A DNA stretch of 64,000 nucleotides from Bigelowiella natans CCMP2755 (Eukaryota; Protista; Cercozoa), in assembly GCA_000320545.1 (NCBI GenBank), contig ADNK01002594.1, positions 7,264 to 71,263 of the forward strand. The letters are read 5' to 3'. The translations under genes were made by a program, and so were the position numbers. Of this stretch, positions 4,578 to 13,213 are shown piece by piece. Positions within the stretch are counted from its first letter, which is position 1. Every line of letters starts with the position of its first letter. The notes under the pieces are model-generated. The model worked only from the letters and a program-made list of their open reading frames with translations. It was not told where the DNA came from and did not search any database.

Positions 4578-5349
4578 CGAGGTGGTTGCCATATCAGAAT
4601 CCGGCCCGTCGAAGTAGATAGACATTGTGTACACGAAGCGACGGGTGGTTCGCATCCATTAGTTGCAATTGCATCCAGCCCATGAACTTGTGCCATAAAA
4701 TGCAGCAGGTTTTCAATTCTTGCCAGGGCCATGTTTGCACAACATGCTTTGTATGCTACATGCCTCGCGCACGCACATGCAACTCTCTTTTGTCAACCAC
4801 ATCTGTAAGACGGATGTAATTAAGCATGATCAATTAAATTTGTTCAATGGTCATCCTTACATCTGTAGCATATATGTCTGGATATATTCATCAAAATAAC
4901 GTGGCTATAGTCTACTCTAGTACTGGAGTATGTGCACCGTTACGCAGAAGCACTGTGTCTGACTATCCATCGATGCATTGGGATCAATGCTTCTAGCTAG
5001 CTAGGCGTGTATACATCTCTAGATCTAGAGATCTATAGACTTCTAGACATGTACACATCACAATAATGAAATCCGCACATTGTTTAGCTACATGTGTGGA
5101 CCTTCATTGATGTGCATATCATGTGCTGTCCTTAATGTCCACATGAAATTTGATGAACGGAGCCCTTGCGCAATGCTAGAGTGGGAGATACGTACAGGCA
5201 GATAAAGCAATTACTAGAATTGGACGTGCAGAAGATGCAGCCATGCGCTACTAGTATGTATAATATCAGCTCTCAGAAGTTACACAGCATGTGTAACATT
5301 TTGATCAGTCCAACTATATTTACATACGATGGACATTATTGAATGCACA

Positions 5350-8202
5350 TCAGTCTGCTGCTCCTTTCATGGTAACTTGAACGTCTGAGATGGCGTGTGT
5401 ATCGTTGCCCTCTGGATTCCCTGAATTCGTGGCCTTTGCTTCTGAAGGATCAATAGCATGTTGCTTCCCGTGACTCCGTTTCTGTGGGACCACGGATGTG
5501 CCCCCCACCTTAGAATCTACTTGGCTAGTTCCTGAAGCAACCCTTACATTTGGCGTCGTGCCTGTTGTCTCTAAGGCAGGTGTATTTTGCCGACTAGAAG
5601 CAAGGTCGCCTCCTGCTACAACATTTTGGACTCGAGCGATGCGTCCCAGCGCACCCTTTCGTTGGATGGCAGAAGTCCTGCGGAACATTTTGTTCCCTCC
5701 TCTATTAATACTTCCAAGTCGGCCTCGAGGAAGATTGTGTCCTGGGGCTCCCGAAACGCTCGCCCTGCTACTAGGTGGTACTGCGGCATTATTCGTTGCT
5801 AACTTAGGAATTTGGGCTCTTGAATTAGGGAAGGCGCTTCTAGCTCGAAATGACATACGCGGCTGGGATGCGCCGACGACATTTTCTCTCTGTATTCCAT
5901 GCCCGCTCGTTGCTGGACTATTATTGTCATTTCTAGATCGATGCTGCGTGTTGATTCGCATAATACTCATGATGTTCTTGCTTATCCCTAAAGCCATGTT
6001 TGACCTGCTTTGCCTCACCACAGTCTCTGTATGCATTTTCTTAATGCGTTCCACGTGCCTTTGCACCTCTCCGGCCTCTGCTTTCATCTCCTTTAGCTCA
6101 ACACCCCTCGCAGCCTTCTTTAGGCTCTTTATCTCAAGCCTTTTTTCCAGACGGGATCCGTGCCTATTGCAGAGTATGGCCACGACCCAGTCGAGGCACA
6201 AGATCGCGCTAAGGACACCTACTAGTGCAGGCCAGTTGCTGAGATCGTTCTCGAAGAAGAACCAACCTAGCAAGACGGTAAGTAGCACCGAGGTTATGTG
6301 TAGCTGCATCTTTGGTAGCCGTATGAGGCGGAGATCCTCCTCCGCGTCGCTGCCTTTGACGTTTGTGTACATGCCGGTAGCGAAGAGCTGCACCATGACA
6401 TAATAGTCGCTGATAAACGCAATCAGTCCAAACACTAGGACAATAGGTATGATTGAGCCGAACACCATCAGCTCGATGAGGGACCCCGCCATCTCAGCGT
6501 ACTCGACATCGAAGTCAACCGTCCTCTCCATTGCAACACCGCAGCCTGTGAGCACAACATGGCTCACCTGCTTTGCGAATAAGACCGTTCCGGGGCGGCC
6601 GAAAGCCCGCAGAGCCCACTTGATAGTGATGAAATCGCCGAAGACGTGGACGATTCGCCTCGAGCAAAAGCCTTGACGATATACTGGCGTGCAGACGTCC
6701 TCCTGGGTGAGAAACGTGCTATAGAAGCTTCCAAAGTCGATTGTGGATGGAGCCCCAATGGCTTGCTTCAGTGAGTCTAAATTGATCAACCTTTGAATGG
6801 TGAACATGCTGCTGTTGAGGCACGCGTCCCACACTGTGAGATAGTACTGGAAGCAGCCCTGATCCAGAATGAGGAGGATAATCACCGGCAACAACGTGCT
6901 GGTGATCTGGTAAATCACGAGCAACCGCGATGACTCCTCTGCGTACCCCGTCGCTTCTGCAAACGTGCGCCCAGCTTTGGGAATTAAGAAAGCATTCGTG
7001 AACACGGAAGCCATTACAACAGCAGTCACCTCGAAATTATTTCGAAGTCTAATCCCCAGGGAGTTTTCGGATGGCAAAGCTGCGCTGATTGTGTAGATGA
7101 TCGAAGGTACGGAGAGTGTCGTGCAGACGCAGATCCACAGAGGTACCAAAAGGAACCATGTCAGCTTTGTGCACCAATGCTTTGTCCTGTTCTTTTTCTG
7201 CCCGATCATCTTTCCCAGTTGCTTTTCGTCCTTGAGGTTTCCAACTGCGGGTAGGGGCATGTTGTCGGTTCCAAATTCTGCCTGTGAATATGATGATGGG
7301 CTTGCTTCCCTCGGTGTGCTCCTGCTTCCGGAAATGCCATCTCTTGCATCCTGAGTACTCCTTGGCATGTTTTTCGCAAAACTAATATTTGCGTGCGACA
7401 AGTGGTCAAGCCGTCTCTGCTGCCTCGGAGTTCTCGGTGGGGAATGAGATCTAGACCTAACAGATCCCGTGATATCATGTTCTGCGTTGTCTTCGTGGTG
7501 GTGGTTGCGGCGGCCAATTCTTTGCATATCTGGGGATGCTGGACTTCGAGGTGGGGTTCCCTGCTGATTTTCCTGTGCTGCTGTTGATGCTACCTTTTTG
7601 TTATCCCCTTCATGACCCTCAATCTGCTTGCGGTATGAGGCTACCATTTCCGTTGCGTAGTGGGAAGGTATACCAGTCGTTTCTACTGCGAGGACTTCAT
7701 GAGCGATACGCCTCACGTTTCTGTTGTGGAGGGCACGGCGTTTGGAGTTATCGTGTGTGCGGATCATGCGGAGATGAAAGATAGCGGTGCATCCAATCGC
7801 CGAAAGTGCGTAGACAACAAGGCAGCCGATGGCAGCTTTCTCTGCCTCTTCAGAATCGAGATAGGCCAAAGAAGACTTCGTTAAGTCGTTGATACAGTCG
7901 TAGTACTTAGCTCCTTTCTCAAAAATTGGAACAAGGGAAACCAACGCGACGAAGCAGCAAACTGCAATACACAAGATGGCAATTTGGAAGGCACGGAGAA
8001 AGTCTCTGGCATTGTGCGTGAGACCCAGCGCCTTTATTTGGATGATATGGCGAATATTGAAACGGCCCAGGAACCACATAAGGACGGCGTTAATGACGAA
8101 TAGGAAGAACGTGAACAGCGTAATTTCGATGAGCCGGCGGCCTAAAAGTAACATAGTTTCAGCTCACAATCTCATCAAATGTTGTTAAATATATATTGTT
8201 TA

Positions 8203-8248
<46 letters not shown>

Positions 8249-8452
8249 ATATAAGAGGCACCTTCCTGGCCGTCCGAGTATAGTAAGGTGTTATCTCTTG
8301 TCGATGCAAGCACCCAAGACGGGATGGAATCTAGGAGGGAGAAAACAGAGAACCCATTCAAAAGCACGGCCCCGCTGCGACATGAATGAAAAGTCGGAAA
8401 TAATATAGCGTACCTCTCGAAGCGGTCATCAGGTTACCCATCAGTACAGTCC

Positions 8453-8499
<47 letters not shown>

Positions 8500-10803
8500 A
8501 AAAAACTAAGCGGAGAAGTAGTACTATTTTCACTTTCATCCTGTACCCGGTTGCTGTAGCTCCCTGGGGGAGGTCTGGTATTTTGCAGGAAATGCGGTTA
8601 TTGTGTAGAATCAGGTTATCAGCCTCTGAGGACTCCATCCTCTCAGGCAGCGTCCCTTCGCACATATTATCACCACTACCCGTTAACCATAAAAAATGAC
8701 CTAATATGTCAGTTTAGAGACTTACCTTGGATGCTGTTGTCGTGCATGGTGAGAACTCGAAGCGAAGTGAGATTCTGCAGCAGCGTGTCCGCGGTACCTG
8801 ACAGAGTTGGTGACGAAGGTGTTCTCTTGCTGAAAAACCCAATGATTTCTATTTCCGTGCACATTTAACAACGACGGCAGCAACATAGCGCGATGGTGAT
8901 AGCGACCTGAAATCTTATTTTTGTGCAGTGTGAGAGTCTCGAGCTTATTCCTCGGAAGAGTTGGGAGGCTTCCACTGATGGAGTGAAAGGTGGAGAGGGG
9001 GGGGGGGGGGATAAAATTACATCATCAATTAGCACAACGGGGATGAGGAGGACAATTCATGTACCTTATCAGGTTGTTTGCCAGCTGCAGCTCAGATAGC
9101 GCAGTAAGATTTTGGAATGCTTCTGGTAAAGTACCCTGGAAGGTGATATTGGATGGTGACGAATGTTACGTTAATGCTCCTATGGGCAAACAGGGAGGAT
9201 AAAAAATCCCACAACATGAGGACAACGAGAATATCTCTTATACCGAGATCTTATTTGAATCAATGGTGAACGCTTGAAGGAACGCGAGCTTCCCAATCCA
9301 TTTTCCCAATGTCCCTTCGACAGAATTATTTGACATCTAAGTAGAGATGTAATGGAGGGGGTTAGGGCATGATTAAATGAAAATATAAAGATCCAAATTT
9401 AAACAAACACGGCCCCCAAAAGCATTGAGATTGGAGAAATATAAGCTCACCCGAAGAAATTGTAGGCGAGGATAATTCTTGAGAGCACTAACATCGCCAC
9501 TCAACTTGTTGTTATCAAGAAGGAGTCCAAGTAAAACAGGCTCTGAAACTCCCGGAGTAATCTAGGAATTGTTAAGATCGAATATGAGCGTAAAACTAGA
9601 TTCAGAGTGTGTTGATTGTGAGTCGATCACAGTGTCCGCATGTACAAAGCAGGCATGATTATCATCGTGGCTGTCGTTATCTTACTCTTGGTAAGGTCCC
9701 AGAGCATGAGTTATTACTGTTTGAGGAGGAGAAATAGGAAGAATTTTGAGTCGGTGAGGCTTGCAAGCACACATCACACACATGCCTCCATTGCTTCCCC
9801 CCCCCACACACATGCACATGTACACGTGCATTCATTCATCCTTTCCTACCTTAAAGAGAGGAAACTGATGTTTCTGGAGAGTTGGGGAATCGTGCCGGAG
9901 AACCGATTGCTGTGGGCGACCACAAATCCAGTATTCGCATAATATGAACTTACGGTCCCTGAAAGGCAGTTCTGGTATATGACGACGCTCAAGTCGCTTG
10001 AAGTGGTGTTGAACGAGGCTGGCAATGTTCCGCTGATACATAGCGAGTAGAACCACACCATTGTAAATTCGTGTCCAAACAAACAATACAAATCTTTGAG
10101 GATTGATTATCTTGCACCTGATTCTGTTCTGGCTGAGAATCAAAGAACGGATATGCGGTGACCTGACGAAGGACTCCGGGATCGTTCCAGAAATCAAGTT
10201 ATCTTGCACTAGCACCTCTTGCACTAGAAGAGAGACAATTGAAAGTCAGGTGTTACTAAATGATGATGATGATGATGATGATGGTGATTGTTACTAAATC
10301 CCAGATTCTAATAATCTATTCCTGCGTGTTATCGTTCATGAGCAATGACCGTTACTGCATTCGGGCAGGTAACCGGAGATTCGATTTGAGGATGCAGATA
10401 TTGCTGGATAACTGCGTAATGTTGATGACGAGATGCTTGGAGGAGTGCAACTTCCTGCAGGAAGATATCCTATTGGAAAGATAGACAGAGGTTAACACAC
10501 CCATAATTCCACGAGCGTTTCATTGCTCCTGCTAGCTACAGGCAAGGGTGAACGTACCAGATAGTAAGTTGCTGCTGAGGTCGTAATTGAAAGGGATGCT
10601 TTCTGGAATATACCCGGAAAGGCTATTCTGATCCAATTGAATATTCAATACCGACGAAGTTGCTGTGAACTGTGGAACTGTCCCGCTAATTAGCAGATCA
10701 AAAGATTAGGGGCGCACAGATGAATATTTAATCGTATAGGATTCAGTGTATGTGTATAATATCCTATTGAGGTACTTATTATCTCTCTCTATCTCTCTCT
10801 CTC

Positions 10804-10840
<37 letters not shown>

Positions 10841-12515
10841 ATTATTATTTTTTCTATTTTTTTATTTTTATTTTATTTTTTATTTATTTTTATTCTATGT
10901 GGGTGTGTGTGTGTGTACTCTAATGCTTTCTTTCACCTCAAGCTGCAATTTCGGATGTTTAGTTCCATCAGAGTTGGCATGGTGGCATAGCAGCTCGGGA
11001 TCGTCCCCTCCAAACTTGAGTTTGCAAGTAATAGAGACGTCAGTCTCGTCTGGCAAATGGAGGTTGGAAGCGGTCCTGCATAACGACGGATGAACAAACG
11101 AATGTCTTAAAATGAAGTTTTTTAGAGAAATTCCTTATTTTAATATCCCTTCCCCCCCCCCCCCTTTTTATTGCGAAGTCCGGAGATACACATCCAAACA
11201 CGTTCCCACCTGATATCCCTCGGTTGTTTTGCAAGCTGAGCTGCTGAATCCTTGAAGATGGAGAGAAGTATGGAAGAGACCCGTCGAGATTGTTGTCGTT
11301 TAAGGAAAGAATGTTCGTTCCTGCGAGGTCAATTCCGATGATTTGGAAATTAAGAGAAGTCTACTTGGAGCAGTGTGCGTTGGTGACTATTTAAATCTCT
11401 CTTTTATTCTTCTTCTTTTCTCTTATATACTTTACAAAATAGTAGTACCGTTTGCAAGGTAAAAAGGGATGCTGCCCGATATTGTGTTGTTTTCGAAGCT
11501 AAGCATGGAGGTGAATATATTCATGAGCAAAATGAGGGATCTTCCATTCAACACTACATTTTAATCGTCAAAAGCAATAGTATATGCAACCTGATACTGA
11601 AGGCTTGGAATGACTCCGGGGAAGAAATGTTTGGAAAGGTGCCTGATAACCTGATGATGCCCCACCCCAATAGGGAATATGAGAACCTCATCCATAGAGT
11701 TATAGTAAAGTTGACTTCTGCACCTATTGTGTCTTATAGTAAGCCCAAATGGTGGTGATTCCATCAACCATTGCGGAATGGATCCTGTATGGGGAATTTG
11801 CTTGGTGAGAAAGTAAAAAGCGGAGTAAGTTTATTGCTCTTTTACCAGATATTCGATTGCTTGACAACTCCAGGTCAATTAATTCATCAACTTCTGCATT
11901 CAATACCTAATACATAAATTATTCTCAACATTAGAAAAGATAACCGTAAAATCTATCGCTTATATCCGCGTTCCATACCTCGGGCAAAGTGCCGGAGAAG
12001 CTGTTGCTTGTGAAACTGACAGCAGCTTGGGAGCCTAGCGGCGCAAAATAGCCTTCGGGTATCGTTCCACTTAATTTGTTATCTCTTAGACTTATTATAA
12101 GGGTGCTATTTCGCCCTGAGGGCACGGGCAGTGTGCCTGAGATCCGATTTTCCCACATATTATACCTGATCAAGGCCGGCATCTGAAGGGAGAAGAGGCA
12201 TGCTGGTAGATGCCCTTCAAGTCCCCAGTTTTGAACATTCAACTCCTCGACTTGGCAGTGGAAGTTGCAAGCGATGCCCTGCCAAGCAGCAGAGTATTGT
12301 CCGCTACAAGGGCACCCAACATCCCAGTTGTTGGTTGCCGCGGTTGTCCACTGAGGCCCGTTGGTAGAGTTCCACAACTCCATGAGGCAAGGCTTTTCTT
12401 GAATACATGAGGTTGAACATAGGGGGGACCAAGGGGTGGGTGATGGCGTGCTTGGGCTGGAACCCACGACCGCGATGGTAATCATGAACAACAGCGAGCA
12501 CGGATTTGCCACCAT
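5350..12515 (-). CDS. Signal peptide + plant-type LRR ectodomain + ~11-pass membrane domain + long disordered C-tail (putative receptor-channel)
   Basis: Exon 1 (from 12515) has a signal peptide (MVANPCSLLFMITIAVVG), an LRRNT-like cap (CLMELWNSTNGPQW...W...PC...WQGIAC) and LxxNxLSGTIP repeats. Many small LRR exons follow to ~8550. In-frame linker exons (...ATATG|TVLMGNLMTASR|DSIPSWVLASTRDNTLLYSDGQE|GRRLIE...) join the intronless terminal exon ~8141-5350, which has ~11 hydrophobic segments. Confidence 0.85.
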
Positions 12516-12626
12516 CGTTAATCTGTGTTTTCAGGGGTCACTTTCTCGTTCCTTCTTCCAAATTTGGACAAGAGGTATAAGGTAAGCTGGATAGGTCAAT
12601 AACTTCCTGAGCCACCTAGATACAAC

Positions 12627-12661
<35 letters not shown>

Positions 12662-13213
12662 GGAGAACCAATTGCCACCCTCCGTGGCTGAATGAACCTG
12701 TAAGTTCTCTAGAGTTGGACAAGAGCCGTTTCGATGTGGAAAACAAACCGTATATGTTGAACAAATAAAGGCCATCTTCACATCGCGACAACATTTCAGC
12801 TGCAAAGGAGGAAAAAAAGACCGGGATCTCCGCGGAACAGGAAAAAATGCTATAAACCGCCTGCATTTTTGTGATTTTTAAGCGTCTATTCCGTTCCGAG
12901 ACAGGAATACCAAAGATTATTACCGGTAGTTCCTTCAACTGCTCCCCCCCTCCACGTTTTGATGCGAACGGAGCTCTGAGCAATGTTTGTGCTGCTGCTG
13001 ATGATCGTCCTATTTGGTGATATGAGTTTAATTTTTACTGACTTATCTCTTTCGTTGAGGGGGCGAGGGGCTAGGGGGCACGCGGTCTCTGTCTGAGATG
13101 TCTTTGCCATTCAAAGAAATTTCGGAAGTAAACAAGTTTGAAATAATCTTTTAAAGTAATAGCTTCAATTTTGATTTACGTACGTATTACGCAATGCCAA
13201 GGGCTGGAGATAA

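What the first reader, a model, noticed from the sequence alone, without database searches (positions are those of the whole stretch)
5350..12515. LRR receptor ectodomain fused to an OSCA/TMEM16/TMC-like multipass domain: candidate ligand-gated channel or scramblase receptor
Seen in sequence: a signal peptide, a Cys-containing LRRNT-like cap and many plant-RLK-type LRRs (LxxNxxSGxxP) splice in frame onto a membrane module instead of a single TM plus kinase. That module has 3 TMs, a ~200-aa polar loop, then ~8 hydrophobic segments and a long disordered tail. Established knowledge: OSCA/TMEM63 channels have this arrangement (TM0-2, large cytosolic loop, TM3-10), and TMEM16 and TMC proteins share the fold. 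Inference: LIPKAGRTFAEATGYAEES resembles the OSCA post-TM4 LP...EG..S.S segment. DFDVEYAEMAGSLIELMVFGSIIPIVLVFGLIAFISDYYV resembles the TM7-TM8 hairpin of the superfamily (F..eY.e......F....Pl...f.l..f...Y.V). I know of no characterised LRR-gated member of this superfamily. It would be a one-component sensor coupling extracellular recognition (pathogen, prey, self/non-self) directly to ion flux or lipid scrambling.
Basis: partly seen in the sequence, partly recalled or inferred. Interest (0 to 1): 0.85.

Follow-up and report, generated by a model that had tools for sequence, protein, structure and literature searches.

The report
LRR receptor fused to OSCA-like channel
This alga makes one spliced messenger RNA for a protein that joins a plant-receptor-like binding arm outside the cell to a membrane domain shaped like OSCA/TMEM63 stretch-activated channels. 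I found no description of this combination, and it may be a channel or lipid scramblase controlled from outside the cell.

Summary

- **One gene:** transcript contigs from three studies show one 21-exon mRNA (20 GT..AG introns, 1669 codons, no internal stop). It links the signal peptide and about 25 plant-type LRRs to the 2.8-kb terminal exon.
- **Independent support:** two homologues elsewhere encode LRR plus the same membrane module in single uninterrupted ORFs.
- **Sequence:** a family profile finds only TMEM63 chains in the PDB (E 6e-6).
- **Membership:** it is not a canonical OSCA. Pfam cut-offs are not met and the folded cytosolic domain is absent. The 190-aa polar loop is a lineage-specific disordered insert.
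- **Family:** at least 193 protist cluster representatives. 44 of the 45 with long N-termini carry LRRs. A conserved cap precedes TM0, and a four-cysteine insert lies between TM5 and TM6.
- **Organism:** Bigelowiella natans (JGI Bigna1 80454). The public gene model is mis-spliced in the LRR part.
- **Untested:** LRR gating of the pore is inference only.

This scan already reported LRR plus OSCA-like genes on other DNA of this genome (s1-724822, s1-729009).

The parts
5197..12656 (-). Approximate extent of the spliced transcript (5' UTR about 140 nt, 3' UTR about 150 nt)
   Evidence: The X1 contig of 5304 nt has record position 38 at 12619 and position 2601 at 7900. The ends are extrapolated from the record length.
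11979..12515 (-). Exon 1. It holds the start codon, a signal-peptide-like leader (hydrophobic SLLFMITIAVVG), a Cys-rich LRRNT-like cap (Cys 33, 37, 43, 68, 70, 83, 87) and the first LRRs.
   Evidence: ORF and translation. Pfam LRR_ComC 6e-5 and LRR_1 2.8e-4. The signal peptide was judged by eye only.
8547..11906 (-). Exons 2-18, the LRR solenoid. With exon 1 it makes about 25 plant-type repeats. Many introns fall at the Gly codon of the xSG motif.
   Evidence: Joints in contigs of X1, X5 and X9. GT..AG check and per-exon translation. Motif count. Pfam LRR_4 and LRR_8 on P0005 572-652.
8262..8655 (-). Conserved C-terminal LRR cap and juxtamembrane linker, in exons 18-20: HNNRISC..TVLMGN..SIPSWVLASTRDNTLLY. 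The cap Cys codon is at 8585-8587.
   Evidence: The motif is found in 36 of 53 eligible family representatives. A Cys lies about 20 residues before the GN in 28 of 29. It aligns to P0001 601-680.
7678..8141 (-). TM0 (module residues 5-33), the IL1 helix, TM1 (49-83), the TM1-TM2 outer loop with conserved Cys89, and TM2 (from residue 104)
   Evidence: AF2 helices. OSCA/TMEM63 alignments start at model residue 6-9. Sub-threshold Pfam RSN1_TM hit on residues 54-128. The profile aligns to TMEM63B 148-324.
7243..7566 (-). Disordered polar insert in the TM2-TM3 cytosolic linker (module residues 199-306)
   Evidence: pLDDT is below 50. Alignment occupancy is 1-4 of 66 sequences. Most relatives have fewer than 40 aa here.
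6865..7233 (-). TM3, TM4 and TM5 (module residues 310-432)
   Evidence: AF2 pLDDT is mostly above 90. Conserved W342, P352, Y356, P363, N366, P394 and G405.
6667..6864 (-). Family-specific extracellular insert between TM5 and TM6 (module residues 433-498). It has four invariant cysteines, W444 and two beta strands.
   Evidence: C436, C447, C490 and C499 are present in 65 of 65 sequences and W444 in 63 of 65. pLDDT 92-96, strands at 455-460 and 478-484.
6151..6666 (-). TM6a/6b with the Pro523 hinge, the TM7-TM8 hairpin, TM9 and TM10 (module residues 499-670)
   Evidence: AF2. R501 in 63 of 65, K514 in 57 of 64, P523 in 62 of 64, G568 in 52 of 54, P572 in 54 of 54. The profile aligns to TMEM63B 589-727.
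5350..6150 (-). Cytosolic extension of the TM10 helix, a disordered tail of about 230 aa rich in Ser, Ala, Arg and Gly, and the stop codon (5350-5352)
   Evidence: Translation, composition, helix 643-712.

Best explanation
This single Bigelowiella natans gene encodes a type-I-like surface protein. A signal peptide and about 25 plant-type LRRs end in a conserved Cys-containing cap. The cap runs straight into TM0 of an 11-helix OSCA/TMEM63-fold module. A long disordered cytosolic tail follows.

The module most likely forms the lipid-facing pore or groove typical of this superfamily and conducts cations and/or scrambles lipids. I propose that the ectodomain is the input. Binding of a ligand, or a pull from something the LRR holds, would displace TM0 and the disulfide-rich TM5-TM6 outer cap. 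These are the elements that border the gate in TMEM63B.

Shown here: one transcript, the fusion, the fold, remote sequence homology, family-wide conservation of the LRR, the cap and the module, and absence of the OSCA cytosolic domain. Inferred only: conduction, plasma-membrane location, and coupling of the LRR to gating.
For: - One mRNA: contigs from three studies join all 21 exons through GT..AG introns.
- Same fusion elsewhere: P0001 and P0007 encode it in single ORFs.
- Fold: AF2 pLDDT 78.6, pTM 0.74. All top 50 Foldseek hits are TMEM63, OSCA or TMEM16.
- Sequence: the family profile against PDB sequences puts only TMEM63A and TMEM63B in its top 8, best E 6.1e-6, in two colinear stretches.
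- ESM Atlas (structure and language-model searches): best structural match is TMEM63Ba (TM-score 0.52), and features point to RSN1_7TM and Anoctamin clusters.
- Family: 193 representatives at E<=1e-3. 44 of the 45 with at least 250 aa upstream carry LRR motifs. The cap is conserved. Pore and gating helices are under strong constraint: R501, K514, the P523 hinge, G568 and P572.
- Literature: in TMEM63B the outer end of TM0 (V44) is part of the hydrophobic gate. V44M makes the protein constitutively active. The open cleft is bounded by TM0, TM4, TM5, TM6 and TM8 (PMC11753361).
Against: - No functional data exist for any family member.
- Pfam RSN1_7TM and RSN1_TM cut-offs are not met.
- The cytosolic domain that canonical OSCA channels carry between TM2 and TM3 is missing, so gating could differ or be lost.
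- The structure is a prediction from 66 sequences.
- The spatial relation between the LRR arm and the module was not modelled.
- The signal peptide and the membrane location were not tested.
- OSCA/TMEM63 proteins are gated by membrane tension without any ectodomain, so the LRR need not be a gate.
Confidence: 0.55

Rival explanations
1. The module is an ordinary tension- or osmotically gated OSCA-like channel or scramblase. The LRR arm only positions it, through adhesion to a surface, prey, mate or matrix, or through sorting to a membrane domain. The arm does not control the gate.
For: Canonical OSCA/TMEM63 proteins gate through the membrane without any ectodomain (PMC11753361; abstracts). Fold similarity is high. 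LRR arrays are common adhesion modules.
Against: The cap and linker between the LRR and TM0 are conserved across distant protists. The family has lost the OSCA cytosolic domain. It has gained an invariant four-Cys outer insert next to TM6. Together these suggest the outside face matters for function.
Confidence: 0.25
2. The membrane module no longer conducts anything. It is a multipass anchor, and signalling runs through the disordered cytosolic loop and tail, for example by phosphorylation-dependent recruitment, as in receptor-like proteins.
For: Long disordered Ser/Arg-rich cytosolic segments are present. There is no significant Pfam match to the channel domains.
Against: The loop is absent from most relatives and the tail is not conserved. 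The best-conserved positions lie in TM3-TM8 and the TM6 hinge, not in the cytosolic parts. That pattern is what one expects of a working pore or groove.
Confidence: 0.12
3. The fusion is an artefact: two neighbouring genes joined by read-through or a chimeric assembly.
For: The public gene model is wrong in the LRR part. The runs are only guessed to be RNA.
Against: Twenty canonical introns are removed in one contig at uniform depth, and the same joints appear in three studies. The frame is open across all junctions. Two homologues are intronless single ORFs. 44 of the 45 long relatives show the same architecture.
Confidence: 0.02

Closest known systems
OSCA/TMEM63 (CSC, TC 1.A.17.5) mechanosensitive channels and scramblases
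   Different: It has no folded PHM7_cyt domain between TM2 and TM3. It falls below Pfam cut-offs. It carries a 740-aa LRR ectodomain in front of TM0 and a 66-aa four-Cys insert between TM5 and TM6. Canonical RSN1_7TM genes exist separately in the same genome.
TMEM16/anoctamin and TMC channels and scramblases
Plant LRR receptor kinases and receptor-like proteins (FLS2 or BRI1 type)
   Same: A signal peptide, a Cys-rich N-cap, a 24-residue LxxLxLxxNxLSGxIP repeat array and many N-glycosylation sequons.
   Different: It has no single TM helix and no kinase. The output is a multipass channel-fold domain. From my own knowledge, in plants an LRR receptor reaches OSCA1.3 through the kinase BIK1. Reviews on this were listed but I did not read them. 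Here the receptor and an OSCA-like module are one chain.
LRR-bearing channels and receptors of other folds: polycystin-1, LGR-type GPCRs, LRRC8/VRAC (from my own knowledge)
   Same: LRR domains attached to a multipass signalling or channel module.
   Different: The membrane folds are unrelated (TRP-like, 7TM, pannexin-like). The LRRC8 LRRs are cytosolic and C-terminal.

Membership tests
OSCA/TMEM63 (CSC) | 11-TM fold with TM0 and an extracellular N-terminus | tested here: met
OSCA/TMEM63 (CSC) | Pfam RSN1_7TM (PF02714) above the gathering score | tested here: not met
   This protein gives no hit at E<=1. Only 3 of 66 relatives hit, best E 2.7e-4.
OSCA/TMEM63 (CSC) | Pfam RSN1_TM (PF13967) above the gathering score | tested here: not met
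   17.2 bits against a cut-off of 27, E 0.004, on the correct region (TM1-TM2).
OSCA/TMEM63 (CSC) | Folded cytosolic domain (PHM7_cyt) between TM2 and TM3 | tested here: not met
   It is not among the 25 (of 37) families listed for the 66 members scanned, and this protein has no hit to it. AF2 shows helices plus disorder and no beta strands at 162-309. The linker is under 40 aa in most relatives.
OSCA/TMEM63 (CSC) | Significant sequence relationship to solved family members | tested here: met
   The profile of 66 sequences against PDB sequences gives TMEM63B at E 6.1e-6, and the top 8 hits are all TMEM63A or TMEM63B. hhalign against a single canonical OSCA ORF was not significant.
OSCA/TMEM63 (CSC) | Mechanically or osmotically activated conductance or scrambling | not testable with these tools
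   This needs electrophysiology or lipid assays.
TMEM16/anoctamin | Pfam Anoctamin domain and a Ca2+ site of acidic residues on TM6-TM8 | tested here: inconclusive
Plant-type LRR receptor (RLK/RLP) | Secreted LRR ectodomain | tested here: met
   Pfam LRR_4 1.1e-8 and LRR_8 2.9e-8. 15 strict repeat matches. The leader was judged by eye only.
Plant-type LRR receptor (RLK/RLP) | Single TM helix followed by a kinase or a short tail | tested here: not met
   There is an 11-TM module and no kinase domain in Pfam.

The most novel reading that the evidence does not exclude
This family is a new class of one-component receptor channels. Ligand binding to, or force on, an extracellular LRR solenoid opens an OSCA/TMEM63-type pore directly through TM0 and a disulfide-stapled outer cap, without kinases or second messengers. 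It is present in several distantly related groups of marine protists: Rhizaria, Telonemia, dinoflagellates and diplonemids.
Probability: 0.3. Interest if true: 0.9.

Novelty: new variant of a known kind. Interest (0 to 1): 0.78.

Why it matters
OSCA/TMEM63, TMEM16 and TMC proteins are known to be gated by membrane tension, Ca2+ or tethers. None is known with a built-in extracellular recognition domain.

A conserved LRR arm attached to TM0, a helix that forms part of the TMEM63B gate, would link surface recognition directly to ion flux or lipid scrambling. Such a link could explain how protists lacking receptor kinases of the plant type sense prey, mates, microbes or surfaces.

It would also offer a natural system for testing how TM0 and the outer face control gating in this superfamily.

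The family escapes Pfam-based censuses of OSCA channels. Surveys of channels and receptors in marine protists therefore probably miss it.

Tried and rejected
- **Single-sequence searches:** they gave almost nothing. phmmer against PDB found only a chance cyclin hit at E 2. Pfam gave only a sub-threshold RSN1_TM hit. The word-indexed protein search found one homologue.
- **hhalign:** the family profile against a single canonical OSCA ORF of the same genome was not significant (probability 1%, E 0.05). It did align the TM7-TM8 proline motif.
- **Raw RNA-seq run X21:** only 12 reads laid from 6% of the run, so it was uninformative.
- **The look-up of encoding contigs for P0014:** nothing on record.
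- **Literature:** searches for an LRR plus OSCA/TMEM63/RSN1_7TM fusion found no description.
- **Rejected readings:** a GPCR, 7TM or any other fold; two separate genes; and the polar loop as the OSCA cytosolic domain.
- **Not done, joined protein:** the joined spliced protein was not sent to any search or folding tool, so the ectodomain was not folded. The exons were joined only inside scripts, to check the frame, to compare with the public model and to count motifs.
- **Not done, other:** no SignalP or DeepTMHMM run, no model of the LRR arm together with the module, no dimer prediction.
Full report
**Gene structure.** The region is eukaryotic and the gene lies on the minus strand. The terminal ORF at 5350-8154 (934 codons) is the only ORF of at least 200 aa in the 64-kb window, apart from its own antisense shadow.

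I laid assembled contigs of public runs on 7900-12650. One contig of run X1 (5304 nt, depth 46.6) runs from 12619 to beyond 7900. It skips intervals that all read CT..AC on the plus strand, which is GT..AG for a minus-strand gene. Run X5 showed 13 of the 15 listed joints and run X9 showed 10, and the three runs come from different studies.

After resolving the ambiguous bases I obtained 21 exons and 20 GT..AG introns. The CDS is 5010 nt (1669 codons), with no internal stop, from ATG 12515 to the stop at 5350-5352. The 662 nt of the X1 contig between exon 11 and the terminal exon equal the summed lengths of my exons 12-20. So the LRR half and the membrane half are on one spliced mRNA.

However, two micro-exons (8451-8414 and 8330-8262) lie between it and the last LRR exon (8655-8547).

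**Organism and public model.** The exhaustive profile search returned P0005. This is EukProt EP00466 Bigelowiella natans P018611, also JGI Bigna1 80454. It is identical to my model from the last LRR exon onwards. In the LRR part it retains introns and uses wrong frames.

Because P0005:735-1447 is an unaltered reference for the membrane module, I used it for searches and folding. I did not send the joined, transcript-based protein to any search or fold tool. I joined the exons only inside scripts, to check the frame, to compare with P0005 and to count motifs. The ectodomain itself was therefore not folded.

**Ectodomain.** Exon 1 encodes a hydrophobic leader, a Cys-rich cap and the first repeats (Pfam LRR_ComC and LRR_1). 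The correctly spliced part of P0005 hits LRR_4 (1.1e-8) and LRR_8 (2.9e-8). The array has 15 strict matches to the plant-type repeat, spaced mostly 23-24 residues apart. That is about 25 repeats over residues 95-700, with 13 N-glycosylation sequons.

**Is the fusion real elsewhere?** P0001 (1419 aa, assembly GCA_977009605.1) and P0007 (1387 aa, metagenome scaffolds of 45 kb) carry LRRs plus the same module. Both are encoded by single uninterrupted ORFs.

The profile search of 1.84 billion representatives found 193 proteins at E<=1e-3 and 52 at E<=1e-10. Of the 45 with at least 250 residues before the module, 44 carry LRR motifs. One of them also carries a CUB domain.

Named members come from Telonema subtile, the dinoflagellate Yihiella yeosuensis and Diplonema japonicum.

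In B. natans the profile detects two loci: this one and C3708. C3708 corresponds to P0017 (Bigna1 66290), has LRR exons upstream, and has its module split by introns.

Earlier notes of this scan (s1-724822, s1-729009) reported LRR plus OSCA-like genes on other pieces of this genome and reached the same reading. I did not check whether either note refers to C3708.

**What the membrane module is.** Single-sequence searches were nearly blank. A 66-sequence alignment of the module (A2) changed that.
- As a profile against all PDB sequences, its eight best hits are all TMEM63B or TMEM63A. The best E is 6.1e-6, in two colinear stretches. The first is the TM1-TM2 region, aligned to TMEM63B 148-324.
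- AlphaFold2 with this alignment gave pLDDT 78.6 and pTM 0.74, with most membrane parts above 90.
- All 50 best Foldseek hits are TMEM63, OSCA or TMEM16.
- OSCA/TMEM63 alignments begin at model residue 6-9, so TM0 is matched. TMEM16 and TMC alignments begin at residue 32-36.
- The ESM Atlas structure and language-model searches agree.

**How it differs from canonical OSCA.**
- Pfam RSN1_7TM and RSN1_TM cut-offs are not met.
- The TM2-TM3 linker here is two helices plus a disordered stretch (module residues 199-306, pLDDT below 50). In the alignment these columns are occupied by 1-4 of 66 sequences, and most relatives have under 40 residues there.
The folded PHM7_cyt domain is missing family-wide.
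- Canonical RSN1_7TM genes exist elsewhere in this genome, on C1850, C800 and C2544.
- The family has its own hallmarks:
  - A cap of the form N-x-h-S-C, then about 20 residues, then h-h-L-x-G-N-x-F..P-x-W..L-L-Y, directly before TM0. It occurs in 36 of 53 eligible members, and the Cys is present in 28 of 29.
  - A conserved Cys89 in the TM1-TM2 outer loop (46 of 48).
  - A 66-residue outer insert between TM5 and TM6 with four invariant cysteines and W444.
  - Near-invariant R501, K514, the Pro523 hinge in TM6, G568 and P572.

**Mechanism.** The topology fits: the OSCA/TMEM63 N-terminus is extracellular. In TMEM63B, V44 at the outer end of TM0 belongs to the hydrophobic gate. V44M makes scrambling constitutive. 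The open cleft is bounded by TM0, TM4, TM5, TM6 and TM8 (PMC11753361).

Here the LRR arm is wired through a conserved cap to that same helix. The family-specific Cys-rich insert sits on TM5 and TM6. The cytosolic domain of canonical OSCA is gone.

I therefore think the outer face is the control surface. Ligand binding or mechanical pull on the LRR arm would shift TM0 and the outer cap and open the pore or groove. This is inference. Conduction, location and coupling are all untested.

The main rival is that the LRR only positions an ordinary tension-gated channel. A non-conducting anchor is less likely, because conservation is concentrated in TM3-TM8 rather than in the cytosolic segments.

**Novelty.** Full-text searches found no description of an LRR plus OSCA/TMEM63 fusion. 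The 2018 survey of the anoctamin superfamily mentions possible fusions only in general terms. I class the finding as a new variant of a known kind: a known fold and a known ectodomain in a new, conserved and phylogenetically broad combination.

Noticed in passing
window 8656-11723; P0005 residues 220-668: The public gene model (JGI Bigna1 80454, also EukProt P018611) is mis-spliced across the LRR region compared with the transcript contigs. It has retained introns and wrong frames, including a 15-aa insert from the intron at 8656-8725.
   Followed up: yes
window 8547-11906: At least nine of the 20 introns interrupt the coding sequence at the same place in the LRR unit, just before or within the Gly codon of the xSG motif. 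This suggests the array grew by exon duplication.
   Followed up: partly
window 5350-8141 versus L009-L012 (G000:C3708:22657-25725): The whole 11-TM module and tail lie in one 2.8-kb exon here. The paralogue on C3708 has the module split into at least four pieces. This points to intron loss here or intron gain there.
   Followed up: partly
window 8585-8587 (cap Cys) and 7894-7896 (module Cys89): The family has six conserved extracellular cysteines: one in the LRR cap, one in the TM1-TM2 loop and four in the TM5-TM6 insert. The cap Cys and Cys89 may form a disulfide stapling the LRR arm to the channel. I did not test this.
   Followed up: partly
window 6472-6510 (module residues 551-563): Acidic positions at the start of TM7 are moderately conserved: D551 in 61%, E553 in 61%, E or D562 in 83%. 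This is reminiscent of the TMEM16 Ca2+ site. Their 3-D positions were not examined.
   Followed up: no
P0037 (3041 aa, ENA contig of 19.9 kb): It holds two LRR-plus-module units in one predicted protein. This is either a tandem gene pair merged by the gene caller or a true double receptor.
   Followed up: no
P0043 residues 378-549: One family member carries a CUB domain and an LRRNT_2 cap ahead of its LRRs, so the ectodomains diversify within the family.
   Followed up: no
window 8189-8253, 8460-8496, 10260-10288, 12627-12665: Microsatellites lie in introns, and one lies upstream of the start codon in the 5' UTR: (AT)34, (AG)18, (ATG)10 and, upstream of the ATG, (GAG)13.
   Followed up: no
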